DNA of 64,000 bases from Hypanus sabinus (taxonomy: Eukaryota): contig NC_082707.1 in NCBI RefSeq assembly GCF_030144855.1, forward strand, positions 154,132,001 to 154,196,000. Reading direction: 5' to 3'. The notes beneath the pieces are model-generated. The model saw only the letters and a program-made list of their open reading frames with translations, ran no database searches and was not told where the DNA came from. Shown here in pieces: positions 1,141 to 34,227 of this stretch (position 1 is its first letter; each line of letters opens with the position of its first letter). The position numbers and the translations under genes are program-made.

Positions 1141-1359
1141 CTAATGTCCATTGCCACCTTCTGACAGTATCCTTGAAGGCTCTGTATATTTAGCTGTTAA
1201 CAGATAAAAAAGTGTTGGAGTGGGCACTAAGGCCAACAGTGGCAGGTCCTGGTCCAGTTTATCCAGTCTGGAAATTGAGATTATTCCATAGGCATGCAGT
1301 ATCCAGTGACTAAACAGAACAACCATTCTCTTCTTTTTGGTGATCAAATCCTTGTAAGT
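1141..1359 (-). CDS. JKAMP: JNK1/MAPK8-associated membrane protein, coding exon 7 (last)
   Basis: AG acceptor at 1360-1361. Reads TYKDLITKKKRMVVLFSHWILHAYGIISISRLDKLDQDLPLLALVPTPTLFYLLTAKYTEPSRILSEGGNGH-TAG, matching the JKAMP C-terminus. The seven joined exons total 933 nt (310 aa) with consistent phases. Confidence 0.96.
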   Translation of the reverse strand, partial: TYKDLITKKKRMVVLFSHWILHAYGIISISRLDKLDQDLPLLALVPTPTLFYLLTAKYTEPSRILSEGGNGH

Positions 1360-1529
1360 CTGTTAAGGAGAAACAATTTTAATTATACATAGAATCTAAT
1401 TTACATTTGTATATTTAGTAGTTTTCACTGAAAGCAATTAAACATTCGTAATTCAAAACTTACACTTTCTGTGAATCCTTTAAAGTGTTCACATAGATTG
1501 TAATTAAAGCCACACCTATTCTCATATTA

Positions 1530-2275
1530 ATTTTCACAGCCTTTAAATCAATTGGGTCTAATATGGAGTCCTCATGCAGGATTCCCTAAAGGTTAACTTG
1601 CAGGTTGAATTTGTGGTAAAGGTGGCAAATGCAATGTTAGCATTTTGAGAGGACTAGAATACAAAAATAAGGATGTAATGCTAAGGCTTTGTAAGGAATT
1701 GGTCAGACTGGATTTGGAGTATTGTGAGCAATTTTGAGCATTTTATCCAAAAAAAAGATATGCTGACATTGGAGAGGGTCCAGAGGAGGTTCGCAAAAAT
1801 GATCTCTGGAATAAAAGGGTTGACATGAGGAGTGTTTGATAGCACTGGGTCTGTACTCACAGGAGTTTATGAGAATGAGAGGGGCAAGGGATCTCACTGA
1901 AACTGACTGAATACTGAAATGCCTAGATAAAGTGGATGTGGAGGATAGGTATCCTATAATGGCGGAGTCTAGGGCCAGAGGGCATGGCCACAGAATAGGG
2001 GGATGTCTACTTAGAATAGAGATGAAGTAAATTTTCTTTTAACCCAAGGGTGGTGAATCTGTGGAATTCATTGCCACATACAGCTGTGCAGGCCAAGTCA
2101 CTGGGTATATTTAAGGTGGAGGTTGATAGGTTCTTGATTAGTCAGGGTATTAAAGGTTGCGGGGGAAAGCAAAAGAATGGAGTTGAGAGGAATAATAAAT
2201 CAGCGATGATGGAATGGCACAGCAGACTCAATGGTCTGAGTGGCCTAATTTTGCTCCTATGTCTTACTGTCTAAT
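1530..2275 (+). mobile_element. CR1-type LINE, 5'-truncated decayed 3' end
   Basis: Degenerate RT C-terminus (VVNLWNSLP..AVQAKSLGIFK.EVDRFL) followed by the family tail ggcctaattttgctcctatgtctta; boundaries approximate. Confidence 0.8.
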
Positions 2276-2329
2276 ATTATAATATGTCAGTTCTCCAAAC
2301 CCTTATTAATTTTTTTTATTCTAACTTAC

Positions 2330-2406
2330 CTGTATTTCTGAAGCGGACATATATACTGCCAAAGTTACCAAGGACAAGACTAAAATTATATATGGAAAAG
2401 CATAAT
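2330..2406 (-). CDS. JKAMP: JKAMP coding exon 6
   Basis: ag|AT TAT GCT...ATA CAG|gtaag; reads YAFPYIILVLSLVTLAVYMSASEIQ. Confidence 0.95.
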
Positions 2407-2787
2407 CTGAAAAAGAGGTTGGAAGTTAAGAAAATATGCAGAAAATCAAATTAAAATATGGTACATATACATATGTATTTTGCCACTAACTGAACTGGTA
2501 TACATTTAATTAGCATTTATTTCAATATTAAGGTAATGTATTAATAGCAATTCTAGATCCTTAACTAGGAATCCCAAATGTGAAATTAAACCAACACCCA
2601 AGACCCATATTTTCAGGCATATTCATTGCAATGTAAATTGGTCAAGAGATATCCTTTCCAATATCTAGATCAAGGTTCTATTGGTTAATTAAAGTCAATT
2701 GTGTTATGGTAAAAATTCTGTCAGAATTTATTGTAAATTGTAGTTGATTTTAAATTTAAGATGGTAACTAAATAAAAATGCACTTAC

Positions 2788-2969
2788 AAAGCAGGCCTCC
2801 ACCAACTGCCTGAAGTACTGTAAGAATTGGGAAAAAGTAAAGCGCTGCATAAATACTTTTAAATCGGTCTGATTTTCCAAGACCACATGCAATCTTTTTA
2901 ACCAGCAGTGGACGAAGCAGCATCATGAAAACGAGACAAAAGGCATAGTATATAAAGACAATAGTGTAT
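2788..2969 (-). CDS. JKAMP: JKAMP coding exon 5
   Basis: Reads YTIVFIYYAFCLVFMMLLRPLLVKKIACGLGKSDRFKSIYAALYFFPILTVLQAVGGGLL; canonical AG/GT. Confidence 0.96.
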
Positions 2970-3225
2970 CTGAAATCAAACAGACAACAGACTATCAGGT
3001 TAGCAACATTAGTAAAGGGGAAATTTTCATTTTATGAAATATTGATTTCCAATTTTTAGGATTCCCATTATCTCTTCCATTTCTGACATCTCAGAAGGCT
3101 GGCAGCCATTATTCTATGCACAATGCTTAATTTTAAATTTAAAAACACAAAGACTCAAAAAACAAATACAAACTGTATTTATATGACCCAGAGAACTACT
3201 TAGTTTACACTTGTATTTAAAAATA

Positions 3226-4090
3226 CAGTCGGCCCTCCTTATATGCGGGGGATTGGTTCCGGGACCCCCCGCGGATACCAACATTCACAGATGCTCAAGT
3301 CCCTATTCAACCTGTCTCAGTGCGCTGGACCTTAGGACCCAGCGGAACCCCAGGCCTTATTTAGCCTGTTTCAGTGCACTGGACATTACGACGCGGCAGC
3401 AGAGATCTGAATCCGCAGTGTTTCTGTTCGTGAAAATAATCACGAACACGATTGAAAATAAAATGAATATAATAAAGTGACTGGAAAGAAGTGAAACACC
3501 ATCGGTCATTGGAAAAACATTAGGCTATGTCGGTCAACAATTGGAACAATTTTAAAAGATAAAGTGAGAAAGGCTCTGCCCCAATGAAAGCAGCTACAAT
3601 TATTACTAAGCAACGCAGTGGTTTAATTATTGGGTTTTGGGTTTTTGCTCTTCCACATCAACCCGGCAGGGTGGAGAGAACACTCAGGAGCAGTCTGTCC
3701 CGAGTCCCAAGAACTTCCGTTCCCAAGCCCGGTGCTGAAACATACGTTCTTATATACGATATACTGAGACAAACGTTTGACTAACTGACGCTAAATAAAA
3801 CCAGATGTACCTGTTCCGACTTACTAAGAAAACTTACGATTTTTTTCAATCCCGANNNNNNNNNNNNNNNNNNNNNNNNNNNNNNNNNNNNNNNNNNNNN
3901 NNNNNNNNNNNNNNNNNNNNNNNNNNNNNNNNNNNNNNNNNNNNNNNNNNNNNNNNNNNNNNNNNNNNNNNNNNNNNNNNNNNNNNNNNNNNNNNNNNNN
4001 NNNNNNNNNNNAGTGCTGGAAGAGCACTTCTAGGTTTTCGCGATTAGTTGAATTCATGCATGCGGAATTCGCGGATAGGAGGGCCGACTA
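3226..4090 (+). mobile_element. TcMar-Tigger (MER2-like) non-autonomous DNA transposon, copy 1
   Basis: TA-flanked TIRs cagtcggccctccttat ... ataggagggccgacta; internal decayed CENP-B-type HTH remnant; contains a 156-nt N run. Confidence 0.85.
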
Positions 4091-4178
4091 TATCAGATGT
4101 TTTTACATAGCAATAACTAAATTAATATCAAAAAACTGAACAAGTCAGTATTGCATATATTGAAAAACATATACTTAC

Positions 4179-4385
4179 AAGGGAAATACAGCTTCCTGTG
4201 TACAATGCAGTGTAGTAATATAATCTGGACTGGGATTATAAAGCATTGTATACCAATCTGATAGCACCTTCACAGGGCAGGACCGAATTTTCAGCTCTCC
4301 TATTGGATCATTCACTAACAATGTGACAATGGCTGCAACAGCACATTCTAGTAATGCAGTCACATGCTGAAAAAGAGCACTGGAA
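4179..4385 (-). CDS. JKAMP: JKAMP coding exon 4
   Basis: Reads SSALFQHVTALLECAVAAIVTLLVNDPIGELKIRSCPVKVLSDWYTMLYNPSPDYITTLHCTQEAVFP; canonical splice sites. Confidence 0.96.
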
Positions 4386-4444
4386 CTGTACAAAAAATAC
4401 AATGAATTATATTTCAAATGAATTTGGTTTTAAATAAATTTCTA

Positions 4445-4977
4445 TAGTACTATGCTAAAGTCTTAGAAACAAAGATATAGCTAGGGTACCTAAACTTTTG
4501 CACAGTAGTGTTTGTCAACTTAGAGTGGAGAGAGAGCACGAGTTAATAAATCTGGCACAAGCAAAGGCTGTTGGGAGTGGCAAGGGTGGAGTTCTGCGAG
4601 TTGGGTGTGGGACAGGTGGCAGAGCAGGAGTGATAGGGGAGTGGGTGCAGACACATTATCCCTGAGACACCAGGCAAGGTAATTTGATTCCAAACAATTG
4701 GTTTATTGATCATTACAGAATGTCTCTATGCTGCTTCCCACTCCCTCTCCTCTTCCATCCCCTTTTCCCAACCATGATTCCGGCCTCCTTCCCCCTTTCC
4801 ACTCTGTCCACAATGGAGACCCATATCAGAATCAGGTTTATAACCACTTACATGTCATTAAATGTGTTTTTTGTTGCGGCAGCAGTACAGTGCAATACAT
4901 AAAATTACTAAAGTACTGTGCAAAGGTCCTGGGCACCCTAGCTAAATTTATGTCCCGAAGACTTTTGCACAGTACTA
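4445..4977. mobile_element. Tc1-type MITE with about 65-bp terminal inverted repeats
   Basis: TA-flanked ends resembling cagtactgtgcaaaagtc; 4445-4508 is an imperfect reverse complement of 4911-4977. Confidence 0.65.
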
Positions 4978-5663
4978 TATAATAAATTTCATCTGAGTCA
5001 TATAATTGAATGCTGGTATAATCTTGGAGTGACTTAAAATAATGAAGAAATAGAATAAGGCAACAAATGGCTGTTTTCAATAATTGTTCCCATGTTCTGG
5101 ATACCACTTGTGGACTTTGTGAACAAAATTTAACATTGCTATTATCTCTTTCTCTTGAACACGTTCCTATGGTATAGCTATTATTTTACAAGTACATCAG
5201 TCTATGTTAGCAAGCATGTTTCTGGGAACTGTCACCTTTGGCACTGACTATATTTCAGATAATAGTCCATATCGATAGGTGCATCATATCATAATGTTAA
5301 ATACAACTACAGCTAAATTATACATTTCTCTGACACAAAGTCACAATTCCATGTCTATGAATTTAAAGGATTTTAATTTCTTACTGAAAGTAATACTTAT
5401 GAGCATCCAATTGTGCTTTAATTAAACGTCTATGTATACATACACTTCTGCTTTCCACAAGTACATAAATATTCTGTTTTGTCCAGAACATACTGTTCAT
5501 TTACATTTTACATTCATAGATGTAGACTTACACCCAAATTGGACCCTACTGCTTATAAATTTATGACTTACAGATAAAAGTGCAATGCTGAAATCTATTA
5601 AGGCACTTATCCTTCTATTATAATAACACCGATTCACATTCCAAATTCTCAAATATCACAAAC

Positions 5664-5818
5664 CTTTTTTTGCCCGAGTACCATTCAATAAAAAACCAGT
5701 GCAAAACCAAAGGCAGAACTGCCATGAAACCAAGATACAGCCAGTCATACAACTCTGGTGATGCTTCACATTTACGACAAATTTTCAGATCATCTGATCT
5801 TTCTCCTCTTGGACATAC
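5664..5818 (-). CDS. JKAMP: JKAMP coding exon 3
   Basis: Reads VCPRGERSDDLKICRKCEASPELYDWLYLGFMAVLPLVLHWFFIEWYSGKK; canonical splice sites. Confidence 0.96.
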
Positions 5819-6334
5819 CTGTTGAGAATTTTTAGGACAATGAAAAATCTTTTCAACTTTCTGTACCATAAATATATGCCATATGCCAGACTGATAGAGG
5901 GTGAATACATCTACTAGATACCTTCAATAATTTTGTTTTTAAGTAAAAAAAAGCCAACATTGTTTGGAATTAAATTAGAGATGTTAATGGAGCCTGCTAT
6001 TGACTTTATTCAAACTACAAATCCCTTTATTACAAAATGCATTTGAATGCATTTAGGCTTGAATTTAGGTGCAATCAAAGATAACTTACAAACAAATACA
6101 ACTAAATTAGATTTTATATCACTTGTACCATGTGAATATGAATGATCTTTTGAACATTTTTGAACAGCATGATGGTTTTGTACACTGAACTATATACAAA
6201 CATATGATTTACATCTACAAGGAAAATACAGCAGCAGTTTAAACCCTGAAACAAATACAAAATGCTGGAAATACTTAGGAAGTCAGGCAACATTTGTGGT
6301 TAAAAAATGAATTAATATTTCCAGATTGATGACT

Positions 6335-6645
6335 GCCAAAGTGGTGTTGTAGCAGTTAGTGAAAAGCTATTACAGCACCAGCGACTCAAACCACTGTCTA
6401 GAACTAGTTTGTACATTCTCCCCATGACCATATGGATTTAGTCAGGGTGATCCGCTTTCCTTCCACATTCCAAAGACATACAGATTAGGGTTAGGAAGTT
6501 GTAGGCCTACTATGTTGGCACCAGAAACATGGCAACCCTTACAGGCTGCACCCACCACATCCTCAGACTGTGTTGGTCACTGACACAAAAAACACATTTC
6601 ACTGTATACTTTGATGTACATGTGACAAATAAAGCTAATCTCTTA
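6335..6645 (+). mobile_element. V-SINE-like SINE (second fragment at about 6700-6810)
   Basis: V-domain-like core ttctccccatgacc...tttccttccacattccaaagac and a 3' tail gtgacaaataaagctaatc. Confidence 0.6.
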
Positions 6646-6863
6646 ATCTTTCATCAAAACAGTTGACCTGAAACATTAAGCTGTTTCACTCTCCACTAGG
6701 CACCACTATCTATAAGGAGTTTGTACAGTCTCCCTGTGACTGTGTGGTAATCTGGTTTCCTCCCACATTCCAAAGGCCTACAGTTTAGGATTAGTAAATT
6801 GTGGGCCTGTTTGCAAGTCTCCAAGATTACAATGTAAGAAATGCAAAAATGAACAAAGCTCAC

Positions 6864-6952
6864 CCCACAATCTCCATATTGCGGTTGACTGTCATTAGCA
6901 ATTTCTTTTATTTGCTTTCCACAATATAATCCAGGGCATATCAAATCAACAT
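6864..6952 (-). CDS. JKAMP: JKAMP coding exon 2
   Basis: Reads (D)VDLICPGLYCGKQIKEIANDSQPQYGDCG|gtgag; homologous to human ACLGLYCGK...YGECG. Confidence 0.93.
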
Positions 6953-7717
6953 CTGAAATACAGTAACATTTAAAAACAAATTGCATTAATAACTAGGTTA
7001 ATTCTGATAAATTATTTGTTCTAATTCACATTTATATAAAATTGACTATTAAAACAGAACTTGACTTTATGGAATTCCAGCAAAACAGAATTCAGTGGTG
7101 GTTGAACAGAAAACCTTGAAGAGAAATGAAGTTATACTTTACTACAGGTATGCCATCACATCCCCAGGCCATTGATGCTAAAGTTCCTCAAGGATGTATT
7201 AATGAGTCTAGAACAGTAGCAGCCTCTATAAATATCTTTTTTAAAAAAAAGGAAAAGACTAGGGAAGGCAAATGAGAGTCTCTTCCAGAAAGAAGTTGCA
7301 GAACTTACAGTTGCAAGACAAAGTTTGCAATTACTTGGATTTCTGCATTAATTACTCATAAAATGTGGTCGGGGAAGCTGTGGAGGAAGGAACAACAGGC
7401 ATCTAGACAGCTACTCAAATGAGCAAAGCATAGACAGATAAGGATTTATATAGCAGGCTTAGGATTAGTCTACATAGGCATCATAGTCCAAAAGGCCTAT
7501 ATCTATGCCCTACAACTAAGACTCTACTGTATAACGTGAAAAAATGTGACATTCAACAGTGTTCAGGAGGTATTACATTCAAAGGAGCAGAAAATCTGAA
7601 AATGTCACCTGTCTAAATGGTACTGGTTAGGTTACATCAACTCTCACAACTAACATTTTTATCACGTAACATTTGCAACAATCACATCAAGTGCAAATTA
7701 AAAACAAGTAAATAATA

Positions 7718-12966: not shown

Positions 12967-13043
12967 ATTGGTGACCCCTCCATGCCCGTGCTCGGCGGCT
13001 TCCCCCGGACAAGCTCCGACTGGCGAAGGAGGAGTTCCAGAGA

Positions 13044-15732: not shown

Positions 15733-16899
15733 AGCACACCCTGATTAACCCTTAAGCACATTTAAGGACATTAAATCTGACTTAGGCATTTAGGCACATT
15801 AAATCTGACTTTCTGAAAAGTATCACAAATCCTGGACCACAGAACATCACAACACGGAAACTACCCTTGCTAACAGGATACAGTGGGATGGCAGTGAATA
15901 TTCACAGGACAGTCAAAACACACTTTGAAGAACTGAAAACGGAAGCGGGGACACTGGGACAATACACCATTCATTGTCTCAGCCTTCAAAAGGGGTAGGA
16001 ATCCGAAAGACATACTAATCAGTACCAAAGTACGAGCAGCGCCAAACTGTGAGGTGGGAAACTGCAGGGCATGCATATACCTGAGAATTTCAAAAAGCAT
16101 ACACAACAGAGCCACAGGAAAGTGGGCCGAGATAGAACAGAGGATAACTTGTGAACAAAAGAATGTAGTATATGCAATCCTCAGTAACATCAGAAGGGGA
16201 AACCAAAACAGACCAGTTAGCAGGCACTTCCAGGAGCATGGGACGTACTCCTGAAAAATATTAGACCTGGAAACTAACATAAACTGGTCAAACGCCCAAA
16301 GAAAAAGAGCAGAGAGGAGATGGATTGAAACACTGCAGACTTATTCCCCGTATGGCCTAAACGAGGCCTAAAAAGCTAGGCTGCCCTGAAACTAACATCT
16401 TCACAGCCCTTAAATACGGATGCTCTTCTCGCCAGGGGGCTAAACCTACCCCACACCACCAGTTATACCCTCCACCACTCAGTGAAACGCCCCCTCAACC
16501 CTAACCCCCCCCCCCAAAACCTAACCCTAAGGTCCAAAGGACCACATACCACAACTAAACCAGAAGGTACATCCCAACCCTAATCCTAATCCTAGTTATA
16601 CAGATGCCAGGTAATGATGTTTAAAAATAGCATTACCCTCAGAATTACATGCCACTCATTATCTGGTCCATGGGAAATACATAAGCCAGGTCTGATCAAC
16701 TTTGGCTGGGCCACCTCGGGGAGGATGTATTATGATTAAAGGCCCGAAACACCTGATGATCCGAGGGTGCATTACTGACGATGTGTCCCAGTGCACACCC
16801 AGTTCGTTGAACCAAGCAGTATCGGACCACGATAATGAAAGGCTTGGACCAGATTAACCTGACTTCCCCATACAAGCCTAGCCGCCATAGCAGCTCATA

Positions 16900-18012
16900 C
16901 TCAAAACTCTGCAGCCTAACCTCTCCCAGCCAAACATATCCATCCACCAGCCCAACATTCAAACCTAATCCTGAAGTCCAAAAGGGGCACACACCCCCAC
17001 AAACCCTAGGCACTTCCTGATTAACCCTGGCTTCAGCCCCACAAACCCTAAGCACACCCCGATTAACCCCTGCTAAACCCCCACAAACCCGATGTCCTAT
17101 GTCAGGAGGGGCGAGATTCAACAAAGGCAAGTGTTGGATCTGGTTAATGAAGGCGGGGCCAGATCAAAGTGGCAGGATCGCGTGAAACTGAATCTCAAGT
17201 GACAAGATCAAAAAGCACAAGAGGGCTGATTCGCCCACTGCCCGCATAATCTCAACCTAACCGAGCCAAGCATATACATCCACCAGCCCAACATTCAAAC
17301 CTAATCCTAAAGTCCAAAAGGGACACACACCCCCACAAACCCAAGGCACTTCCCGATTAACCCTGGCTTCAGCCCCACAAACCCTAAGCACACCCAGATT
17401 AACCCTTGCTAAACCCCCACGGGCTGGATGTCCTATGTCGAGAAGGGCAAGATTCAACTAAGTCAAGTGTTGGACCTGGTTAATGAAGGCGTGGGCCAGA
17501 TCAAAGTGGCAGGGTCGCGTGAAACTGAACCTCAAGTGACGAGATCAAAAAGCACAAGAGGGCTGATTTGCCCACTGCTCACATAATCTCAGCCTAACCC
17601 TAACCCTACTAGCCCATCCTCCATTGCATCTCAGACCACCACTCAAAACTCTGCAGCCTAACATCACCCAGCCAAACATATACATCCACCAGCCCAAAGC
17701 TCAAACCTAATCCTAGAGTCCAGAAAGGGTATACACCCCCACAAACCCTAGACACTCCCCGATTAACCCTGGCTTCAGCTCCACAAACTCAAAGCACACC
17801 CTGATTAACCCTTGCCAAACCCCCACAAACCCAATGTCCTATGTCAGGAGGGGCAAAATTCAACAAAGGCAAGTGTTGGACCTGGTTAATGAAGGCGGGG
17901 CCAGATCAAAGTGGCAGGGTTGCGTGAAACTGAATCTCAAGTGACGAGATCAAAAAGCACAAGAGGGCTGATTCGCCCACTGCCCGCATAATCTCAACCT
18001 AACCCTCACCCT
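16900..18012 (+). repeat. Three tandem units (periods 336 and 406 bp) upstream of the Penelope ORF
   Basis: aaacctaatcct recurs at 16961, 17297 and 17703; the core gtc-ggaggg...gcccactg...cctaacc starts at 17101, 17437 and 17843. Confidence 0.9.
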
Positions 18013-18299
18013 ACTAAACAGCTACTAAACAGCTTCAGCAACTACTGAGAATGGCCAGTATTAAATTTCCCCATGCCAGTATCTGGGTGCCAGAATTAAA
18101 CTTTAGCCACAGTTTGACAGAGGCAGAACAAGGGCCAAGTAAACGAGGTTATTAGAACTAAGAATCATATCCCTACGATCCCGGCGAGGCAGTTTAAGGT
18201 AGACACAGACCATATCCATTGGACAGAGAGCACAGCCCAGACAATAGTCAAGAGGTGGATGCAGTCTTTAAACTAGAGTGGAGACAAAGCCAAGAGAGG

Positions 18300-20405
18300 C
18301 AGGGTGCATAACTGGGGGAGACTATCGTGAATCTCTCCCGCACATTCACCCATACAGAAACCCAGCAAAAGGTTCTGAACAGGCCTCACTTTTGTACCAA
18401 CTGCAAAACTCCATAAGGAGCAGATTAAGAGGGACATGGATAAGTTCTATAGGAGATTGGTACTCATCGACTATTTTGGCAAGTCAGAGCATAGAAAGTC
18501 CCCTTTCATCCCTCCCTCAGACTGGATGAGATAATAGAGAGGGAGAAGGAAGTACAGGATAAGCCCAATCTAACTAGGAAGGAGAGAGCAGCCCTGACAG
18601 AACTGAGGGAAAACATGGACATTGTTATCAAACCAGCGGATAAAGGGAGCAGCATAGTTATCGTGGACAAACAGCAAATACCTATTTGAGGCACACAGAC
18701 AATTAAACAACACGGAACACTACACAAAACTAAAGGAACCCATATACTGGGAAACACACACAGAAATTAGGGACATTTTACAAGTACTGGATAGGACTGG
18801 GTACCTTGAAGGGAAGCAAGTAGAGAACCTGACAGGGATACAGCCATGAGCAAAAAGTTTTATATCCTCCCCAAAATACACAAGAACCCAGACTCATGGA
18901 CTGTTCTGAGGGAAATTCCACCCGGCAAGCCCATCATGTCAGACTGCAGCAGTGAGTCATACAGGATAGTGGAGTTCATTGATGCCTGCCTTAATCCACT
19001 ATCACAGAAACACTCCAGCTACATCAAGGACACATATCACTTTGTCCGAATAGTCAATTCCATGTCAGTGCCCCCTGAGGCCATACTCTTCACCATGGAC
19101 ATTGAAAGCCTGTACACCAATATCGAAACAGACAGGGGTATAGAGGCAGTGAGGGACATCCTACGGAAGAACCCTCAGCTAGGGAGACCATACGAGGCCT
19201 TGCTAGAACTCCTTTACCTCAGCCTGACTAAAAATGACTTTGAATTCAATGATGAATTCCACCTACAAGTCAAGGGCACAGCAATGGAAAAGAAGTTTGC
19301 TCCAGCCTATGCCAATATATACATGGCAAAGTGGGAGGAAACAGTCTATCCAAAGTGCCCTAAAATACCCATGTGTCTCTATAGATACCTGGATGACATC
19401 TGGGGGGTGTGGACACACTCAGAGGTGGAATTAATTCAAATCCTAAACACTCATCATCCATCCATTAAGGTTAAAGCCACAACAAATAGGGAGAAGATTG
19501 ACTTCCTGGACACTACAGTACTTAAACTAGCACCAGAAAATGGCAACCAAAAACTAGCTACCAAGGTATTCTTTAAAACCACAGACACTGACACCCTCCT
19601 AAACACAGAGAGCCACCATCCCAAACACACCATCAGAGGCATTGTCAAGGGACAGCTGACTCGGTTTCACCGCATTTGCACAAGGGCGGAGGACTTCCAC
19701 CAGGCCACAACTATCCTCTTATCTGCAATTAGACACAGGGGCTACAGCAGGAGACTTATACACATCAAATCTGACTTTCTGAGAAGTATCACGAATCCCC
19801 GACCACAGAATACCACGACACGGAAACTACCCTTGATAACAAGATACAGTGGAATGGCAGTGAATATTCACAGGACAGTCAAAACACACTTTGAAGAACT
19901 GAAAACGGAAGCAGGGACACTGGGACAATACACCATTGTCTCAGCCTTCAAAAGGGGTAGAAATCCGAAAGACATACTAGTCAGTACCAAAGTACAAGCA
20001 GCGCCAAACTGTGAGGTGGAAAACTGCAGGGCATGCATATACCTGAGAATTTCAAAAAGCATACACAACAGAGCCACAGGAAAGTGGGCCAAGATCGAAC
20101 AGAGGATAACTTGTGAACAAAAGAATGTAGCATATGCAATCCTGTCCACAGAATGCCATATTATATACATAGGGGAGATGGGCAACAGCTTGAGAACCAG
20201 ACTCACGGGACATCTCAGTTACATCAGAAGGGGAAACCAAAACAGACCAGTTAGCAGGCACTTCCAGGAGCATGGGACGTACTCCTTAAAAATATTAGGC
20301 CTGGAAACTAACATAAACTGGTCAAACGCCCAAAGAAAAAGAGCAGAGAGGAGATGGATTGAAACACTGCAGACTTATTCCTCGTATGGCCTAAACGAGG
20401 CCTAA
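18300..20405 (+). pseudogene. Penelope/Neptune polyprotein (RT, Cys linker, GIY-YIG endonuclease), frameshifted at the 5' end
   Basis: N-terminal TIVNLS...LTFVPT and IKPADKGSSIV in broken frames. Open part 18846-20405 has LPKIHK, MDIESLYTNI, KGTAM, YRYLDDIW, CEVENCRAC and YAILSTECHIIYIGE, ending YGLNEA. Confidence 0.9.
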
Positions 20406-22344
20406 AAAGCTAGGCCAGCCGAATAGGATATACCAACACAAAAATTTATTAAAAGATCGAGAAAATCAGAGTAGGGAGGAAGAGGAGGATCCCCTTCAGT
20501 CACCCACTCAGAAATGAAATTAAGACAAGGGGCCATTAAATAGGAAAGGGACTCCTTACTTTGGAAATAGAGCTTAACAGCTAGGCCCCAAAACAGAACT
20601 TAATTCCCCAAATAGTACCACCTAAACAGAATAGAGAGGGATAAAGTTAAAAATTATAACTCTACGAGGGGTAAACACTAGGAATAGACTTGTAACGACC
20701 AGTCTGATCCAAACACAGCACTTGCCCCAACCTCCCGGCTTCCCCCCAGGGGGTAGGATACATTCCCAACACATGGCCCTGCCCTGAAACTAACATGTTC
20801 ACAGCCCATAAACACGGGTGCTCTTCTCGCCAGGGGGCTAAACCCACCCCACACCACCAGCTATACCCTCTGCCACTCAGCGAAACCCCCCCCAACCCCA
20901 CCCCCCCCAAAACCCAACCCTGTCCAAAGGACCACATACCCCAACTAAACCAGATGGTACCTCCAGTGAACCCTGGCCAAACCCCCACAAGGAGGCCTAC
21001 TTAATGCGGGACCCCATGCTCCTTTTCTTCCAAACACCCCCCGATGGGGTGGCCTACATGCACATTCCTCGGCCGTATGCCTAAACATAACAACTACAAC
21101 CATCCTACGCACCCCCATAAACCGGTGCCCTCTCTCCACCAGGGGTCCAAGGTCACTTCACTACACAATAAGTTTGGGCATCCCATCCCTAGACCTCCCA
21201 CCACCACAAGATCCCGTGACCCCACTACCCAAGCAACACACCTTGGCCCAACACCTCCAACACACCCCCATAAACCCTACGCCTCTCACCGGCAGAAGGC
21301 CATGCTCACCCCACACCACCAGTACCCAGATTCACCCAATATCACCAGCGGTTAGACTCCTGGTTCAGTCCTCCCCCCCTACTACAAGGACAAACCCCCC
21401 CCTGCACACCCCAAATAACCCAAGCCAGTCCCCAAAGGACAGCCCCACCTCCCAACCATACCCTAATCGTAACACTTCCAACCCTCTTACACTCCCCCAT
21501 AAACCCTAGGCCTCTCCCCCGCCAGGGAGCCATGTCCACCCAACATCGCCAGCACCATGCCACCCCACAAGCATCCCCAATCCCACCCTTCACCCTAAAC
21601 CTAACTTCCAACGGACTGCACACCCCAACTAAACCAGACAGCACCCCAAATAACCCAATCCACACCACGCAAAAAGGCTTACATAACAGTCCTTTACCCT
21701 ATCCCTAAACCTAACATCTTCAACCATGCTACACACCCCCATAAACCCATGCCACCAAGGAGCCAGATTCACCCAAGATCACCAGCAGTTAGGCTCCCAG
21801 TCCAGTCCTCCCCCCCCCCACTGAAAAGGAACAACCCCCCCCCCCCCGCAACACCATTTGCCACCCTGCCCCACCTCCCTTTGCCGGGAATCCTCAACCC
21901 CCATTATTTAACTCTATACCCCAGCTGGTCCCTCCCCCAAAAGCACCCTTCAATTAGCTGCTGCACAATCCTCAGTCACTAAAAAAAACCCCAAATCCAA
22001 AGCACTATCCATAAATAATAACTCCACCAATTTAACTTAAACTCCAGAATGGAGGTTAACAAGGAGGAAGATCTCAATAAAGGCAAGTCGGGGACCTAGA
22101 TGATGACAACGTGGGCCAAAAAACAAAGTGGCAGGGTGAAGTGATAGGCATCTCCAGTATGAGATCCACAAACACTAGAGGGTTATTTTGCCCACTGCCC
22201 ACATACTCACACCCTAACCCTAACACTTTTATGGAAAAAAGTACAGTTGACATTTTGGCTCGATGCTACCTAGCCTGCTGAGTTCCTCCAGCATTTTGTG
22301 TGTTACTTGTCTACTTAGCCTCCCTCCCCACTTATTTTTAATAT

Positions 22345-23709: not shown

Positions 23710-24190
23710 ATGGCGCACGGCCGGCCGCCGCCGTGTAGGGATGGCGTGATCTCGGTGCTCGACATGCACACGGGCGGCGAGCCGCTGCGTATCGTCACCG
23801 GGGGCTTCCCGCCCGTCCTCGGCCACGACATCCTAAGCAAACGGCGCTACGTGCGCGACCAGCTGGACGGGCTGAGGCGGCTCTTGCTCTTCGAGCCCCG
23901 GGGCCACCGTGACATGTACGGCGCGCTGCTAGTTGGCTCGGAGGAGCCCGACGCCCACCTCGGCGTCCTCTTCATGCACAACCAGGGCTACAGCACCATG
24001 TGCGGGCACGCCGTCCTGGCTCTCGGCCGCTACGCCCTGGATTACGGCTTGATCGCCGAACCCAGCTCCCCTGAAACACAAGTCAACATCCACTGTCCGT
24101 GCGGCCTCGTCCGAGCTTACGTTCAGTATGACCGGGGCAGGAGCGGACGTGTCCGCTTCCACAGCGTCCCTGCCTTCGTCTTCGCCACAG
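23710..24190 (+). CDS. L3HYPDH: Proline racemase family enzyme, L3HYPDH orthologue, exon 1
   Basis: aacaATGG start; DMHTGGEPLRI, FEPRGHRDMYGA, FMHNQGYSTMCGH and IHCPCGLV motifs; donor ACAG|gtaga. The five exons total 1044 nt (347 aa). Confidence 0.95.
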
Positions 24191-25670
24191 GTAGAGGCCG
24201 AATGGCTGCTGCACGGATCACAACATCACTGTTTCAGTCTTGTCATTTACACGTTTCCCGTTTACTCGGCGCTCGCACTAAATTATTTTGATGTGTTCAG
24301 TCCCGGTCAATCAAAACAGCCACAGAGTTTGCACATATAGTATTCTGTATATTTTATCCCCGTAAATCAATACATCCGTAAGAGTTTACATATATCCCGT
24401 ATATTTGATCCCAGTGGATCATGCGGCCTCGGAGGTTGCACGTTATTTTCTGTATATTCAGTTCCAGTGAATACTTGAGCTCAGATTTTTGTACGTGAGG
24501 CTTCCTATTTATTCAATAACAGCGTGTTCAGTCGTAACAAACCAACAAAGTTTGTATAGCCTTGTATGTATATATATATATTCAGTCAGAGTGACTGAAT
24601 ATGTTGCAAATAGAAAGTTTCCAAGTGTTACGTCTTCTGTCTTTAATCAAAATGTGGGTTGTGTCTCCAAATCTATAAATTCTAGCTTGGCAACTTTTGC
24701 TCTGGGTACATGTCAAAATTTGCTCTGACTGTGACTGCAGACTGAATGTTCTAGATTCAAAGTAAAATATCAGAATACATACATGTTGCCACATGCAACC
24801 TTGAAGTTCTTTTTCTTACAGACATTCTCAACATATCTGTAGAACAGTAACTAAAAAGGATCAATGAAAGAATAAAACCATAGAAGACAACAAACTGGCC
24901 AAATGGAAATGCAAATATAAATAAAGAGCAATAAATAAGGAGAGCATGAAATAACAAGATAAACAGTGAGATCACTGGTTGTGGGAATATCTCAATAGGT
25001 GAATGTAGTTATCTTCTTTTGTTCAAAGCATGATGGTTGAGGAGTAGTAACTTTTGGTTCTGTAACGGAGTCTCTTGCTGTTTTCCTGTTAATTTGTTTT
25101 TATGGAGTAATTTTGCATGTAGCCAGTTTTTAGTGGAGACCTGGGGAAAACCCACATTGTCCATAGGGGGAATATGCAACCCCCTCACAGACTGCACCAG
25201 AGATCAGGATTGAATGTGAGTCATTGGAATTGTGAGGTGGTAGTTCTGCTAGCAGCCCTGATAAAAACTTTGAAGGTGGAAATAAAAGAGGGTTCCATGT
25301 GAAAAGTAAATCATGCCAAATGGCATAATGTAATAATAAAAAGAACGATCAATATTTAAATCACCATTACACCACCTTTGTCAGCTGCTTTCCTGCTTAC
25401 AGTACACTGCTTTTTTATTGTAGGATATAGGCATGTCTGTACAACATTTTTGGCATTGATTTACAATTCATGACAGTCTGTGCCTAGATTCACTAGCAAA
25501 GTGTTAAAAGGAGAAGATTCAGGTTCCAAACAGTAATGATTTCACTCTTGGATCAGTTTTAAGTCCCTTGGAATTAGAGCAGAAGGCTGAGAGAAGCTCT
25601 GTTCATATTTAGGGCTGTGACATAGATGAGCACGTACAATGTACAGCCCTACCTTACTGGTCTTTTTCAG

Positions 25671-25846
25671 ATATTCCTATTGATCTACCTGGACCTGGAC
25701 GTGGCAAGATTGTGGTGGATGTTGCATATGGAGGTGCTTTTTATGCATTTGTGAGTGCAGATTGTTTTGGTTTGGACGTTTGTTCCTCCAGGACACGAGA
25801 CCTTGTAGATGCAGCAGTAACTGTAACTAATGCTGTGAAAGCACAG
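25671..25846 (+). CDS. L3HYPDH: L3HYPDH exon 2
   Basis: tttttcag|AT; reads IPIDLPGPGRGKIVVDVAYGGAFYAFVSA...AVKAQ|gtgcg. Confidence 0.95.
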
Positions 25847-26791
25847 GTGCGTAAAGAAATAAAGTACTTCTCTGATTCTCCCAGCTGCCATGGTTTAAAT
25901 GCAGATTAGTGATGGTGTTTATGTGCTCCATGTGGCAAACATCCAACCCCCCATCCCTCCTCCATAAAGAAACTTCTTCAGAGGATGGAAAAAAATATGC
26001 AGTTGTGAGGTGGCTAATTTGTGTTGTTAGAAATGGATCCCCTTTCTACAGAGTTGTGTGTAGTGAATTAAACACTATGCTTTTTTTGTATTCTGCTCCA
26101 AGTTTTATTTACCTTGCAGACTTAACAGTCCTAGCTGAAAGGCAAAGTAAATAATTCTAAGGAAAACAGGGCAAACAATGCAGGGTTTTATGTTCAGCCC
26201 AGATTATGTGGCTGTGAAACTTAAGTATGGCGATTTTTGTAACTGTTTAGACCTTTGGTGAAATATATAAACAATATTTTGTGACCTGGTTTGGGATTGG
26301 GATAATTGGACAAGCAATTCTGCAATCCTTGCAGCTCTGAGACGTCAACAAGTTTGGACTAGTAGTCATTACAAGAGCTGATCATAAGGGTGATAGCTGC
26401 ATTCCTCCTTATCAGTCTCCAGGATTGTTTTAATTTGTTTCTCGTGATTTGATTCAAATTTGATGGATTGGTTCCGCCAATATCAATGAGTATCAGCTAC
26501 AAGGAGATATTGCCCATAAAGCAATGTACTTGGCATTCGTACCGATTAATGGAGACTAAAAGTTACTTTTTGTTTTAATGTTAATTCCACTATAGTTGCC
26601 ATATGCTAAATAATTTATGAAGTACAAGTACTACCAATGGTTGTCAGTTAACATTCTGGGCTTCTGAAAAAGGCTTAAGTATGATGATACATAACAATTA
26701 AAACACTTTTTTTGTGAACACTTACAAGATGCAACTGCTGCTACTCATCCAGTAAGTTAATATCAAACCTGACATGTATTCTTTTTTACAG

Positions 26792-26914
26792 GTCAAGCTG
26801 CACCACCCTGATAGTGAGGATCTTGCCTTCCTCTATGGCACTATAATAACTGATGGCAAAGATGCATTTTCTGAAGAACCAACAGCAAATATCTGTGTTT
26901 TTGGAGATGCTCAG
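26792..26914 (+). CDS. L3HYPDH: L3HYPDH exon 3
   Basis: Reads VKLHHPDSEDLAFLYGTIITDGKDAFSEEPTANICVFGDAQ; canonical splice sites. Confidence 0.95.
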
Positions 26915-27228
26915 GTAGATAAATTAAATCATTATTTGTAAACATTATTGCAATAAGTAGCAGTACAGGCATTTTAACAATCCAACTGTACAAGTAAAAA
27001 CAAAATAACCTCATTTAAACTCTAAACTGGAACTGCTTGGACAGAATCTTTATTGGGTACTCATTTACGTAACCTATTGAATAAGTTGTACATCACACTC
27101 TTACTGAATTGTATAACTAAAGCTAAGCAAAATTCTCCTGATAGAACTTAAAAACATTACACAGAAGCAACTTGTTGAAATGAAATAGTTTTGACATTGC
27201 CCTTTCCCTGGGTTTGGTTCATCTAAAT

Positions 27229-29142
27229 CAGGGGTGTCAAACTCAAATACACAGTGTGCCAAAATTAAAAAATCAGTACAAGTCGAGGGCCGGACTGGTT
27301 CAGCGTTTATTGCAAAACTTATTGAAATGAATTTATTACACATATTAACCTGGAACTAACAAAGCTTAGGTTATTGCCTACAAAAACAACATTGAACATT
27401 AAATAAATAAAAAATCAGTTGCATTTATTTCTTATGGCTTTATCTGCAGCTTTTCCAGAGTAATTTCTAATGAAAACATTTTTCCACAGGCCAACACTCT
27501 GTGATTCACACTCGTCTAAGCCAGATACTTCGCATCTCATCTTGGATGCAAGTTCATCAATGTTTGGAGTCAGGCTCTGAGCTGAGGAAATCCTCAGAAT
27601 TGAGTGAAGGTGTTCATCAGAAAGACGACTCCTGTGTGATGTTTTGTTTATCTTCATCAAAGAGAACAGTTGTTCACACAGATATGTGCTGCCAAACATA
27701 GAGAGCATTTGAGCAGCTTGGGTACGCAGCTGGGGCATTGTGTCGGGAATGAAACGTAGAAACTGTGCAGCGCCCACTGAGTCATACTTTGCCTTGAGTG
27801 TGTCACTACATTGGAGTTCAATCAGCTCCATTTGTATGTTGGTTGGTGCGTTTTCCACGTCAGCTGCAAATGGATTACTGAGCAGTTCAAACCTGCTTTT
27901 TTTGGGCTTCAAAGTCGGCAAATCGCCGTGTGAAGTCGGCACCAAGTATGCTAAGTTTTACAGCAAACTTTGCACGTGGGAACACTGCGGTAGAAACCTG
28001 CTCTTTCATAGTTTGGCAACACGGAAAATGGGTCAAGTTTTCTTGCTGTATCTGTGTCTCCCACAGGCGCAGCTTGGTTTTAAAAGCCCTCACTGCAGCG
28101 TACATGTCTGTGATCACACAACCCCGCCCCTGAAGCTGCAGGTTGAGCGCATTGAGATGGCTCGTGATGTCACACAGAAACGCCATTTCACAAAGCAACT
28201 TTTTATCCCGGAGCTCTGTTGTGTCTTTCCCTTTGCTTTCCATGAACTGACAGATCTCCTCACGCAACTCGAAACATCTTTTCAGCACTTTTCCTTGGCT
28301 TAACCATCGCACCTCTGTGTGATAGGGCAAATCGTTATATTCTGAACCCAACTCCTCCAAAAACGACTTGAACTCGCGGTGATTTAAACCTTTGGCTCTT
28401 ATGAAGTTAACTGCTCGTGTTATGGTGCTCATTATATGTTCCATTTTCAAGGCTTTGCCACACAACGATTCCTGGTGTATGATGCAGTGATAAGCTGTCA
28501 GTTCACTTGCGCCGTTTTCCTCCCGCATCTTCTCCTGGATCCTGCCTACCAATCCACTCTTTTGACCGCACATTGTGGGCTTCTGTTTCTTGTCCAGATG
28601 CTTGTATTTGTCGTGGTGTTTCGTTTCATAGTGTCGTCTTACGTTAAATTCTTTAATTACAGCCACACCATCTCCACACACAAGACAAACAGGTTTGCCC
28701 TTTATATCTGTGAACATATACTCTGCCTCCCACCTGCCTTGAAAACCCCTGTTTTCAAAGTCCACCTTTCGTTCAGCCATTTTTGGGGTGAGGGATAGCT
28801 AAAAGTTGACCACACGTGACTAGCGCCATGAGAGAGTAAGGCAAGCGCGAGCAATGCACTGGCAGTGCATTGTGGGATTTGTAGTATTAGTGGTGCATGC
28901 AATATACCGGTGGGCCAGCTCTAATAGAAAAAAAATTTACTCATTAATGATATTCAGGAAATAAACCAGGGAAACCGAATAAACACTAAAAACCCTGAAA
29001 ACCTGGTACCTGAATAAACTCAGCATTAGCCATATCATACGCCATAGGCGCTTCGATTACTGGGGCCAGCTTTAATAGTAATTAGATATTATCTCGCGGG
29101 CCAAAGATAATTCCACCGCGGGCCTTGAATTTGACATATATG
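27229..29142 (-). mobile_element. hAT-Charlie (OC1/SPIN-like) DNA transposon, internally deleted, in L3HYPDH intron 3
   Basis: Perfect 8-bp TSD ATCTAAAT (27221-27228 and 29143-29150); imperfect TIRs caggggtgtcaaactca and catatatgtcaaattca. Transposase has a BED-like CLVC..RRHYETKH, then HCIIHQE, VRWLS and FGSTYLCEQLFS, with one frameshift near 27900. Confidence 0.93.
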
Positions 29143-29252
29143 ATCTAAATCCTTGATGTTCAAACTGGGAGATGATTTTAAATTGAATGACTGAATTATA
29201 TACAATGTATTAAAAAGTTCAGAGATATTTTTGCTCAACTTGTCTTGAATAG

Positions 29253-29390
29253 GTCGACAGAAGTCCTTGTGGCTCAGGTGTGACTGCTCGTGTTGCATTG
29301 CAGTATCATAAAGGATTTGTTCTACTGAATCAGACTAGGACATTTCAAAGTGGTCCAACAGGCTCATTATTCACAGGAAAAGCTGTTGAG
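29253..29390 (+). CDS. L3HYPDH: L3HYPDH exon 4 (second catalytic motif, here DRSPCGSG)
   Basis: aatag|GTC GAC AGA AGT CCT TGT GGC TCA GGT...GTT GAG|gtgaa; reads VDRSPCGSGVTARVALQYHKG...FTGKAVE. Confidence 0.95.
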
Positions 29391-29506
29391 GTGAAGAACA
29401 ATTTATAAATATTATGTTTAAGCACCTTACAAGGCAGTAAGTTTTGATGCAAAATAAATGCAAGCAAAAAGATTGGGATGCTGATTTAAAAAATGATTTT
29501 TTTCAG

Positions 29507-29632
29507 GAAACAAAATGTGGCGATTTCAAAGCTGTTACAGTGGAAATAGCAGGACAAGCACATTACACAGGAACGGCAAACTTTTGTGTCGAAGATGATG
29601 ACGTTCTCAAAGATGGGTTTCTTCTTCGATGA
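29507..29632 (+). CDS. L3HYPDH: L3HYPDH exon 5 (last)
   Basis: Reads ETKCGDFKAVTVEIAGQAHYTGTANFCVEDDDVLKDGFLLR-TGA; tandem AATAAA near 29946-29956. Confidence 0.95.
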   Translation, partial: ETKCGDFKAVTVEIAGQAHYTGTANFCVEDDDVLKDGFLLR

Positions 29633-32579: not shown

Positions 32580-33480
32580 GCAGCCGCTGGATACCCTGAC
32601 AACGGCGGTACGCGTCACGGTGCTTGGAGATGGAGAGCGGAAGGGAGGCGGAGCGGGACATGTGCGGCTACTGAGGCGGATCAGGAGTGGAACCGGAGGA
32701 TGAATCGGAGTGCACTGGTAATGATACGTGCTGAAAGGCTAGAACTTGTAGCCGCCGGCTTCCGAGCGAGGTAACAGCGCTGCCGCGGGGAGATGTTACG
32801 CAGAAAATGGGCGGCTGAAAGGGTGTCGGTAAGGCAGCGTGGGAACCGGGGGCGAGTGGTCCGTGGCCCAACCAAGCGGCCGCAGGGACCGCTCGCCGCA
32901 GTGGCGGCCCCGGTGATGTGCGGAGCTTTAGGTGGACGCGCCATTCGGGTCCATGGATCCGCCTACCGGGACTTCGGTGCTGAGCAACGACACGGCGCTC
33001 GGCAACAACAGCGGAGCAGCGCAGCCGGAGCGAGCGAGCGGCCAGACCGACGTCGGGTCTCTGCTCCACGGTGTGGCCGTGGCTTCCAAGGCTCTGCTCC
33101 TCTTGCTCATCTTTCTGTTGTCCAGCCTGGGCAACGCGGCGGTGATTGCGGTGATCGTCAAACACCGGCAGCTGCGGACTGTGACTAACGCCTTCATCAT
33201 GTCGCTGTCCTTGTCCGACCTGCTCACTGCCCTGCTCTGTGTGCCATTCTCCTTCATCATGCTCTTCAGCCAAGACGGTGTCTGGATCTTTGGGGACCGC
33301 TTCTGCGTGGCCAACGGTTTCTTCAATTCCTGCTTCGGGATCATCTCTACCCTCACCATGACCCTCATCTCCTTCGACCGCTACTACGCGATCGTCAGGC
33401 AGCCGCAAGAAAAGATGGGCAGGCGTCTGGCCGCGCAGCTCTTGGCCGCCGTCTGGCTGACGGCCTTCATTTTCTCTTTC
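32580..33480. promoter_or_regulatory. CpG island over the GPR135 promoter and 5' CDS
   Basis: Sharp rise in GC and CpG; GC-box-like ggaggcggagcggg near 32644. Confidence 0.75.
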
Positions 33481-34227
33481 CCCTGGTATCTCTTGTTACA
33501 AGCCCCAGGACAGCAGGTTATTCATAAGAAGGGCTTCTACCACTGTATGTATATCTTCCACTCGGGCAGCTCCCGTATGGGCACTGGGTACAGCATCGCC
33601 TTGATTGTCACCTGCTACCTGTTGCCCTTCTCCCTGATGTGCTTCTGTCACTACAACATCTGTAAGACAGTGAGGCTATCAGAGATCCGAGTCCGTCCGG
33701 TCACTACATATGCCCATCTGCTACGCTTCTACAGTGAAATGAGGACAGCCACCACAGTGCTGATAATGATCGTCTTTATCATCTGCTGCTGGGGTCCTTA
33801 TTGTGTAATGGGAATCATCACAGCCACTGGAAACTTTCATTTCACCCCCATCATGGACACTGTAGCTATCTGGCTAGCCTGGGCTAATGGTGCCCTCAAT
33901 CCCTTAATCTATGCTACCAGGAACCCCAACATCTCTATGCTTTTGGGAAGAAAAAGGGAAGATGGTTACAGGACTAGAAATATAGCAGCCTACTTGTCTA
34001 GGCAGAACCAGGACCATGAGGTTAGGAGTCAGGCAGACAGGATAAGGGACCGCTATGTCAGTCGGCAAGGGGCTGGTAGCAGGATGTCTTCTTCTAGCCC
34101 GGCAAATGGAGATGTCCTGATGTGGGCCTGTAAAAATCCAGCTGTGCTTTTCTGCAGGGATGGACCACCCAACAGAATGCCTGAGCCTGCCATGGCCAAA
34201 TCAGAGACTGCAGACACCAGCCTTTAA
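32953..34227 (+). CDS. GPR135: Orphan class A GPCR GPR135, single coding exon (424 aa from first ATG)
   Basis: Seven hydrophobic segments with GN, LSLSD, DRY, CWGP and NPLIY; [25 protein letters not shown] and MWACKNP...DTSL are typical of GPR135; synteny agrees. The ORF track start (32932) is a GTG. Confidence 0.95.

What the first reader, a model, noticed from the sequence alone, without database searches (positions are those of the whole stretch)
23992..29279. L3HYPDH orthologue with a Cys/Cys active site: candidate vertebrate proline/hydroxyproline racemase-epimerase
Seen: exon 1 encodes STMCGH (Cys98, TGC at 24001) and exon 4 encodes DRSPCGSG (Cys266, TGT at 29268-29270) in an intact 347-aa spliced frame. 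Established: in the proline racemase family, two catalytic cysteines define racemases and 2-epimerases. Human L3HYPDH has Cys104/Thr273 (DRSPTGSG) and is a trans-3-hydroxy-L-proline dehydratase; its engineered Thr-to-Cys mutant gains epimerase activity. ACN to TGT needs at least two substitutions, so a single base-call error is unlikely. Inference: this lineage's syntenic orthologue may make D-proline or cis-3-hydroxy-D-proline, or be bifunctional as some bacterial Cys/Cys members are. That would imply an undescribed D-imino-acid or collagen-catabolism route. I cannot tell from this window whether Cys is ancestral or a reversion.
Basis: partly seen in the sequence, partly recalled or inferred. 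Interest (0 to 1): 0.85.

Follow-up and report, generated by a model that had tools for sequence, protein, structure and literature searches.

The report
Cartilaginous-fish L3HYPDH carries two catalytic cysteines
A stingray's hydroxyproline-degrading enzyme, like that of every other shark, ray and chimaera sampled, has a cysteine where all but one of 126 bony vertebrates have threonine, the one change known to turn the human enzyme into an epimerase, but its activity has never been measured.

Summary
A five-exon, GT-AG, 347-aa gene on the + strand (23710-29632) encodes MCGH with Cys98 (TGC, 24001-24003) and DRSPCGSG with Cys266 (TGT, 29268-29270).

It is the true L3HYPDH orthologue. It lies between JKAMP (minus strand) and a GPR135-like receptor, as in Callorhinchus and Hemitrygon. 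It is 72% identical to the salamander Pleurodeles orthologue, and its closest solved relative is human L3HYPDH.

The cysteine is not an error. All 8 other chondrichthyans sampled have Cys (Callorhinchus uses TGC). By contrast, 125 of 126 bony vertebrates have Thr. It is the only column with a perfect class split, and every other known active-site residue matches human.

Echinoderm, hemichordate and brachiopod outgroups mostly have Thr. Cys is therefore probably a reversion on the chondrichthyan stem, but cyclostomes, amphioxus and tunicates were not sampled. Cys/Thr switched at least 8 times in a 79-sequence tree.

Function is inferred, not shown. The enzyme is most likely a trans-3-hydroxy-L-proline 2-epimerase, probably with dehydratase activity retained. 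A true proline racemase is unlikely, because the pocket is the 3-Hyp type.

I found no paper on Cys-type vertebrate orthologues. I class it as a new variant of a known kind.

The parts
23710..24190 (+). L3HYPDH exon 1 (ATG at 23710; 160 codons plus 1 base), containing the MCGH motif
   Evidence: Pfam PF05544 E=1.5e-47; donor GT at 24191
24001..24003 (+). TGC codon of Cys98, the first catalytic cysteine (human Cys104)
   Evidence: invariant in all 119 vertebrate sequences aligned
25671..25846 (+). Exon 2
   Evidence: AG/GT boundaries; frame continues from exon 1 (G|AT = Asp161)
26792..26914 (+). Exon 3 (123 nt, same length as in Callorhinchus)
29253..29390 (+). Exon 4 (138 nt), containing the DRSPCGSG motif
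   Evidence: Pfam PF05544 E=2.7e-10
29268..29270 (+). TGT codon of Cys266, at the position of human Thr273
   Evidence: Cys in 9/9 chondrichthyans and Thr in 125/126 bony vertebrates
29507..29632 (+). Exon 5 with stop TGA at 29630-29632
1144..6959 (-). JKAMP exons (upstream neighbour, head-to-head); synteny marker
   Evidence: tblastn of Callorhinchus JAMP-gene frames against the window gave six collinear blocks at 83-97% identity. JAMP is the upstream gene in L003 and in Hemitrygon
32932..34227 (+). Single-exon GPR135-like receptor (downstream neighbour); synteny marker
   Evidence: Pfam 7tm_1 E=1.4e-49. Nearest Atlas clusters are 'G-protein coupled receptor 135', score 0.98. A 7tm_1 gene sits downstream in Callorhinchus and Hemitrygon

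Best explanation
[quoted passage not shown] The second catalytic position, Thr in all but one of the 126 bony-vertebrate sequences sampled, is Cys, and this state is fixed across cartilaginous fishes.

Shown: the gene model, the orthology, the class-wide fixation under purifying selection, and an active site otherwise identical to human.

Inferred mechanism: Cys98 removes the C2 proton of trans-3-hydroxy-L-proline, as in the human enzyme. With Thr opposite, the carbanion can only expel the 3-OH, giving pyrroline-2-carboxylate. With Cys266 opposite, a thiol can reprotonate C2 from the other face. The enzyme should then also, or mainly, form cis-3-hydroxy-D-proline. In effect it would be a natural version of the human T273C mutant: a 3-Hyp 2-epimerase, probably bifunctional with the dehydratase reaction.

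Outgroups suggest the Cys arose from Thr on the chondrichthyan stem.
For: Gene model and codons.
Orthology: the JKAMP(-)/L3HYPDH(+)/GPCR(+) order holds in the window, in Callorhinchus and in Hemitrygon. Exon lengths and phases are shared with Callorhinchus. Vertebrates form one clade (100/99) and chondrichthyans one clade (100/99).
Fixation: 9/9 Cys versus 125/126 Thr, with both TGT and TGC codons in use. dN/dS between window and Callorhinchus is 0.18.
Active site: human D74, Y76, M103, C104, C137, Y192, Y241, F263, D269, R270 and S275 are all conserved. Only T273C and E98Q differ.
Fold: a model of the 96.5%-identical Hemitrygon protein has pLDDT 90.9. Its best PDB match is human L3HYPDH 7QPO, TM 0.93-0.95.
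Mechanistic precedent: the human Thr-to-Cys mutant shows T3LHyp epimerase activity (PMC3958920 citing Visser 2012). PaLhpL, with Cys at the second position, naturally makes both cis-3-hydroxy-D-proline and the dehydration product (PMC5144071 supplement). Cys-Cys TlProR epimerises 3-Hyp (PMC4364671).
Polarity: 6 of 7 ambulacrarians, and also Lingula and Macrostomum, have Thr.
Against: No enzymology exists for any Cys-type animal orthologue. I could not read Visser 2012, so I do not know how much dehydratase activity the T273C mutant keeps.

Cys and Thr exchanged at least 8 times among 79 sequences. The Cys forms include barnacles, bivalves, Lytechinus and one teleost transcript. This could mean the swap is nearly neutral for the pathway, because reversible epimerisation plus irreversible dehydration still drains to pyrroline-2-carboxylate.

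The polarity inference lacks cyclostomes, cephalochordates and tunicates, and the animal/bacterial backbone of the tree is a polytomy.
Confidence: 0.55

Rival explanations
1. [quoted passage not shown] Cys266 merely substitutes for Thr as a non-catalytic pocket residue, or epimerisation is a minor reversible side reaction. The pathway 3-Hyp -> pyrroline-2-carboxylate -> proline is unchanged.
For: The whole pocket apart from this residue is the human type. The best family model is the dehydratase model, with the same score pattern as a primate enzyme. Frequent Cys/Thr toggling in animals, fungi and bacteria fits a tolerated swap. PaLhpL, with Cys at this position, still dehydrates.
Against: On the human scaffold the same single change is reported to create epimerase activity. 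Thr is invariant in 125 of 126 bony vertebrates and Cys in 9 of 9 chondrichthyans, across both codons. That pattern is not what a neutral site shows.
Confidence: 0.28
2. It is a genuine proline racemase or 4-hydroxyproline 2-epimerase, making D-proline or cis-4-hydroxy-D-proline.
For: The Cys/Cys dyad defines ProR and HypE (PMC4364671; PMC3958920). Cys-Cys TlProR is broad in specificity.
Against: Ligand site 1 is Tyr70 (DMYG), where ProR has Phe (DMFG in 7PB3). The pocket is identical to human L3HYPDH. NCBIfam scores are dehydratase 352 bits, proline racemase 281 and 4-HypE 228. The protein nests inside the L3HYPDH clade.
Confidence: 0.08
3. The catalytic change is irrelevant because the protein's selected role in this lineage is non-enzymatic, for example the interferon-stimulated antiviral role reported for human L3HYPDH.
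For: Human L3HYPDH is reported as an interferon-stimulated gene that inhibits EV71 translation (PMC10875296, listed).
Against: All catalytic and ligand-binding residues are strictly conserved across about 120 vertebrates, and dN/dS is 0.18. This argues for a maintained active site.
Confidence: 0.05

Closest known systems
[quoted passage not shown]
   Same: Orthologue. Same gene neighbourhood and same fold (TM 0.93-0.95 for the Hemitrygon proxy). Phmmer E=1.5e-166 for the proxy. All named active-site and hinge residues are identical.
   Different: Thr273 is Cys266 here, and Glu98 is Gln92. The human enzyme is a dehydratase without racemase activity (PMC9309405).
Engineered human T273C mutant (Visser 2012, as cited in PMC3958920)
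   Same: Same scaffold and same Cys/Cys dyad. The chondrichthyan protein is in effect the natural counterpart.
   Different: The mutant is a laboratory construct. The natural protein has about 28% other substitutions and a long history of selection with Cys. The mutant's kinetics could not be read here.
PaLhpL (PA1255) of Pseudomonas aeruginosa, Ser-Cys type
   Same: Cys at the second catalytic position. It naturally makes both cis-3-hydroxy-D-proline and the dehydration product from trans-3-hydroxy-L-proline.
   Different: Ser rather than Cys at the first position. It is bacterial and belongs to a different subfamily with different ligand sites.
TlProR of Thermococcus litoralis (PDB 6J7C) and Trypanosoma cruzi proline racemase (1W61)
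   Same: Cys/Cys dyad and the same fold. TlProR epimerises 3-Hyp.
   Different: Only 32-37% identical, with a ProR-type pocket (Phe at site 1). They are racemases of proline first.

Membership tests
Proline racemase superfamily (Pfam PF05544) | Significant match to the family profile | tested here: met
   Exon 1 E=1.5e-47 and exon 4 E=2.7e-10
Proline racemase superfamily (Pfam PF05544) | Two-domain pseudo-symmetric alpha/beta fold | tested here: met
   Tested on the 96.5%-identical Hemitrygon protein, not on the window protein itself: pLDDT 90.9; TM 0.86-0.95 to 7QPO, 6R76 and 1W61
Proline racemase superfamily (Pfam PF05544) | Conserved MCGH and DRSPxGxG motifs | tested here: met
   STMCGH at residues 95-100 and DRSPCGSG at 262-269
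Vertebrate L3HYPDH orthologue group | Conserved synteny JKAMP - L3HYPDH - GPR135 | tested here: met
   That human shares this order is from my own knowledge and was not tested.
Vertebrate L3HYPDH orthologue group | Falls inside the vertebrate clade of the gene tree | tested here: met
   Vertebrate clade 100/99 and chondrichthyan clade 100/99
[quoted passage not shown] | First catalytic residue is Cys | tested here: met
   Cys98
[quoted passage not shown] | Second catalytic position is Thr | tested here: not met
   Cys266 in the window and in all 8 other chondrichthyans
[quoted passage not shown] | 3-Hyp-type ligand pocket (human Y76, M103, Y192, Y241, S275) | tested here: met
   All identical
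[quoted passage not shown] | Curated equivalog model NF045511 above its cut-off | tested here: inconclusive
   It is the best model at 352 bits, but the cut-off is 540. A primate L3HYPDH scores 359.5, also below the cut-off. The model is tuned to prokaryotes.
[quoted passage not shown] | Dehydration of trans-3-hydroxy-L-proline to pyrroline-2-carboxylate | not testable with these tools
   Needs an enzyme assay
Proline racemase / hydroxyproline 2-epimerase (Cys-Cys type) | Cys at both catalytic positions | tested here: met
   Cys98 and Cys266
Proline racemase / hydroxyproline 2-epimerase (Cys-Cys type) | ProR- or HypE-type ligand sites (site 1 Phe in ProR, Val/Ser in HypE) | tested here: not met
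   Tyr70 at site 1, versus Phe in 7PB3 ProR. Site definitions are from PMC4364671.
Proline racemase / hydroxyproline 2-epimerase (Cys-Cys type) | Closest to the ProR or HypE profile or subfamily | tested here: not met
   ProR model 281 bits and 4-HypE model 228 bits, both below the dehydratase model at 352
Proline racemase / hydroxyproline 2-epimerase (Cys-Cys type) | 1,1-proton transfer at C2 (racemisation or epimerisation) | not testable with these tools
   Needs a D2O exchange or chiral product assay

The most novel reading that the evidence does not exclude
Cartilaginous fishes possess an active PLP-independent imino-acid 2-epimerase that makes cis-3-hydroxy-D-proline from collagen-derived 3-hydroxyproline. 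This would give a whole vertebrate class an endogenous D-imino-acid pool and a catabolic branch, for example via D-amino-acid oxidase, that bony vertebrates lack. The same switch would have been made independently in barnacles, bivalves, a sea urchin and at least one teleost.
Probability: 0.2. Interest if true: 0.8.

Novelty: new variant of a known kind. Interest (0 to 1): 0.6.

Why it matters
L3HYPDH is annotated by homology as a dehydratase in every vertebrate genome. Here a whole class carries the one substitution reported to convert the human enzyme into an epimerase. That class is roughly 400 million years old by my own knowledge of the chimaera/elasmobranch split.

If the natural enzyme epimerises, it would be, to my knowledge, the first vertebrate member of the proline racemase superfamily with racemase-type chemistry. 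It would also show those database names to be wrong, and it would point to D-hydroxyproline metabolism in sharks and rays.

The recurrent Cys/Thr toggling across animals also offers natural replicate experiments on how a two-base racemase becomes a one-base dehydratase and back. All of this can be tested with one recombinant protein and one point mutant.

Tried and rejected
(1) My first three translations were off by one base and gave stops. A script corrected them.

(2) The exhaustive representative search with exon 1 alone mostly returned exon-sized fragments without the second motif. It was useful only for seeding.

(3) My first 90%-cluster search used P0020, which turned out to be barnacle-like. 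It gave invertebrate and bacterial relatives rather than vertebrates. The Pleurodeles query and the sea-urchin transcript query did the real work.

(4) I hypothesised that the chondrichthyan E98Q change is mechanistically coupled to T273C. I rejected this because barnacles, Lytechinus, Paraglomus and the Cys-type teleost keep Glu.

(5) Visser 2012 (JBC) is not held under its PMC id or DOI, so the mutant's kinetics are second-hand.

(6) The Carcharodon protein is not on record for a DNA look-up. Hemitrygon DNA was too large to fetch. Codon evidence therefore rests on the window and Callorhinchus.

(7) My first exon-chaining script failed. It was replaced by boundary enumeration.

(8) Literature searches for proline racemase in sharks, 3-Hyp epimerase, and D-proline in elasmobranchs found nothing relevant.

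(9) The scan's earlier notes hold no racemase-family paralogue elsewhere in this genome. That is not proof of absence.
Full report
**Observation**

Reading the window and splicing by script gives a five-exon gene on the + strand. The exons are 23710-24190, 25671-25846, 26792-26914, 29253-29390 and 29507-29632. Every intron is GT...AG. The coding sequence is 1044 nt, 347 codons plus TGA.

Residue 98 is Cys (TGC, 24001-24003) in GYSTMCGHA. Residue 266 is Cys (TGT, 29268-29270) in VDRSPCGSG. Exons 1 and 4 each match Pfam PF05544, Pro_racemase.

**Identity and orthology**

- The closest full-length proteins retrieved are chondrichthyan 'trans-L-3-hydroxyproline dehydratase' entries. Hemitrygon akajei is 96.5% identical, Pristis 92%, and Narcine, Carcharodon, Rhinoraja, Chiloscyllium, Mustelus and Callorhinchus 83-87%. 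The source is therefore a stingray-like batoid that is not Hemitrygon akajei itself.
- The Hemitrygon protein's best solved relative is human L3HYPDH, 7QPO (E=1.5e-166).
- An AlphaFold model of the Hemitrygon protein (pLDDT 90.9) superposes on 7QPO with TM 0.93-0.95.
- Upstream on the minus strand lie JKAMP exons at about 1144-6959. Downstream on the plus strand is a single-exon receptor whose nearest Atlas clusters are GPR135.
- The same JAMP(-)/Pro_racemase(+)/7tm_1(+) order is called in Callorhinchus (L003) and Hemitrygon.
- Callorhinchus shares the five-exon structure and the last three exon lengths, 123, 138 and 126 nt.
- In a careful maximum-likelihood tree with the trait column removed, vertebrates form one clade (100/99) and chondrichthyans form one clade (100/99).

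This is the syntenic orthologue, not a paralogue.

**Is the cysteine real and more than chance?**

- Among the best 120 homologues of the Pleurodeles protein, all 8 chondrichthyans have DRSPCGSG.
- 110 of the 111 bony-vertebrate sequences in that list have DRSPTGSG. These include coelacanth, lungfish, amphibians, mammals, bichir, gar and many teleosts. Fifteen further bony fishes from a later search are all Thr.
- Callorhinchus uses TGC where the ray uses TGT. The residue, not the codon, is conserved, and independent assemblies agree.
- Of all alignment columns, 266 is the only one with a perfect 9/9 versus 110/110 split.
- dN/dS between the window and Callorhinchus is 0.18. The gene is under purifying selection.

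**The rest of the active site**

I numbered residues with a 354-aa primate sequence and used the residues named in the human structure paper (PMC9309405). D74, Y76, M103, C104, C137, Y192, Y241, F263, D269, R270 and S275 are identical in all nine chondrichthyans. Only T273C and E98Q distinguish them.

E98Q is not coupled to the switch elsewhere. NCBIfam models rank dehydratase (352 bits) above proline racemase (281) and 4-Hyp epimerase (228), and a primate L3HYPDH gives almost the same numbers. The chondrichthyan enzyme is, to a first approximation, a natural T273C L3HYPDH.

**Polarity**

A search seeded with a transcript that proved to be from a sea urchin brought in deuterostome and other invertebrate orthologues.

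| State | Taxa |
|---|---|
| Thr | Diadema, Acanthaster, Amphiura, Anneissia, Ptychodera, the urchin transcript, Lingula, Macrostomum |
| Cys | Lytechinus, the bivalves Solemya and Mya, all barnacles |
| Fungi (split) | Paraglomus Cys; Rhodonia/Postia Thr |

On the 79-row tree at least 8 Cys/Thr changes are needed. By outgroup parsimony the gnathostome ancestor had Thr, and Cys is a reversion on the chondrichthyan stem. It needs two nucleotide changes, probably through Ser.

This conclusion is provisional. No cyclostome, cephalochordate or tunicate sequence could be reached with the capped searches. The backbone joining animals and alphaproteobacteria-like sequences is unresolved.

**Mechanism (inferred)**

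The family's chemistry is established. ProR and HypE use two cysteines on opposite faces for a 1,1-proton transfer. Cys-Thr enzymes keep only the base that removes the C2 proton and then eliminate the 3-OH (PMC4113996; PMC4364671).

Three precedents bear on what a second-position Cys does with 3-Hyp:

- The human Thr-to-Cys mutant shows T3LHyp epimerase activity (PMC3958920).
- PaLhpL, a Ser-Cys enzyme, makes cis-3-hydroxy-D-proline and also dehydrates (PMC5144071 supplement).
- Cys-Cys TlProR epimerises 3-Hyp.

I therefore expect the ray enzyme to epimerise trans-3-hydroxy-L-proline at C2, probably alongside dehydration (confidence 0.55).

The main rival (0.28) is that the pathway outcome is unchanged. 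Epimerisation is reversible and dehydration is not, and frequent toggling in evolution fits a tolerated swap. A true proline racemase is unlikely (0.08), because the pocket carries Tyr70 where ProR has Phe and is otherwise the 3-Hyp type.

**Novelty**

Full-text searches found no paper on Cys-type vertebrate or animal L3HYPDH orthologues, on proline-racemase-family enzymes in cartilaginous fishes, or on D-proline in elasmobranchs. Public records name all these proteins dehydratases by homology.

I class this as a new variant of a known kind. It is real, class-wide and directly testable, but its biochemical meaning is still an inference.

Noticed in passing
L002:876-878 (Logan SRR19345908, 1779-bp transcript contig): One percomorph teleost transcript (P0386) has TGT Cys at the Thr273 position. 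It is 91-92% identical to cichlid and needlefish orthologues and is sister to Xenentodon in the tree. It is the only Cys among 126 bony-vertebrate sequences. It may be an independent reversion or a single-sample artefact.
   Followed up: partly
P0426 (Lytechinus variegatus) versus L001:934-936 (urchin transcript, ACA) and P0427 (Diadema): Within sea urchins, Lytechinus has Cys while a 75%-identical urchin transcript and Diadema have Thr. This is another recent switch, or possibly a paralogue pair.
   Followed up: partly
Gene tree; identities: Animal L3HYPDH sequences are 56-63% identical to alphaproteobacterial or metagenomic proline-racemase-family proteins (Dongia, Pelagibius, Geminicoccaceae and others). 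They interleave with them in an unresolved clade (86/96). This reflects either unusual conservation or gene transfer between bacteria and animals.
   Followed up: no
window 12690-22226: A transposon pile lies between JKAMP and L3HYPDH. ORF 13044-15560 carries RT, RNase H and integrase domains, which indicates an LTR-retroelement pol. ORF 18846-20402 has only a weak GIY-YIG hit, which is Penelope-like. Three 42-bp tandem arrays with CCCTAA-like units lie at 16993-17834.
   Followed up: partly
window 27890-28780 (minus strand, inside intron 3 of L3HYPDH): A 297-aa ORF with a Spin-doc-type C2H2 zinc finger (PF18658, E=2.5e-9). It is probably part of a transposon-derived gene or a relic.
   Followed up: no
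window residues 257 and 168-171 of the L3HYPDH protein (exon 3, codon 26900-26902; exon 2): The window protein alone has Gly257 where the 8 other chondrichthyans and 109 of 110 bony vertebrates have Ala, nine residues before Cys266. It also has a 2-aa longer loop (PGPGRGK versus PGHGK in Hemitrygon).
   Followed up: no
P0155 (Solemya velum, 560 aa): The bivalve protein holds about 1.6 tandem copies of the whole racemase-like domain (two blastp segments). This may be a gene-model fusion of tandem duplicates.
   Followed up: no
Hit lists: No bird or reptile orthologue appears in any of the three best-120 lists, although mammals, amphibians and fishes do. The lists are truncated, so this is only a hint of loss or divergence in sauropsids.
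   Followed up: no
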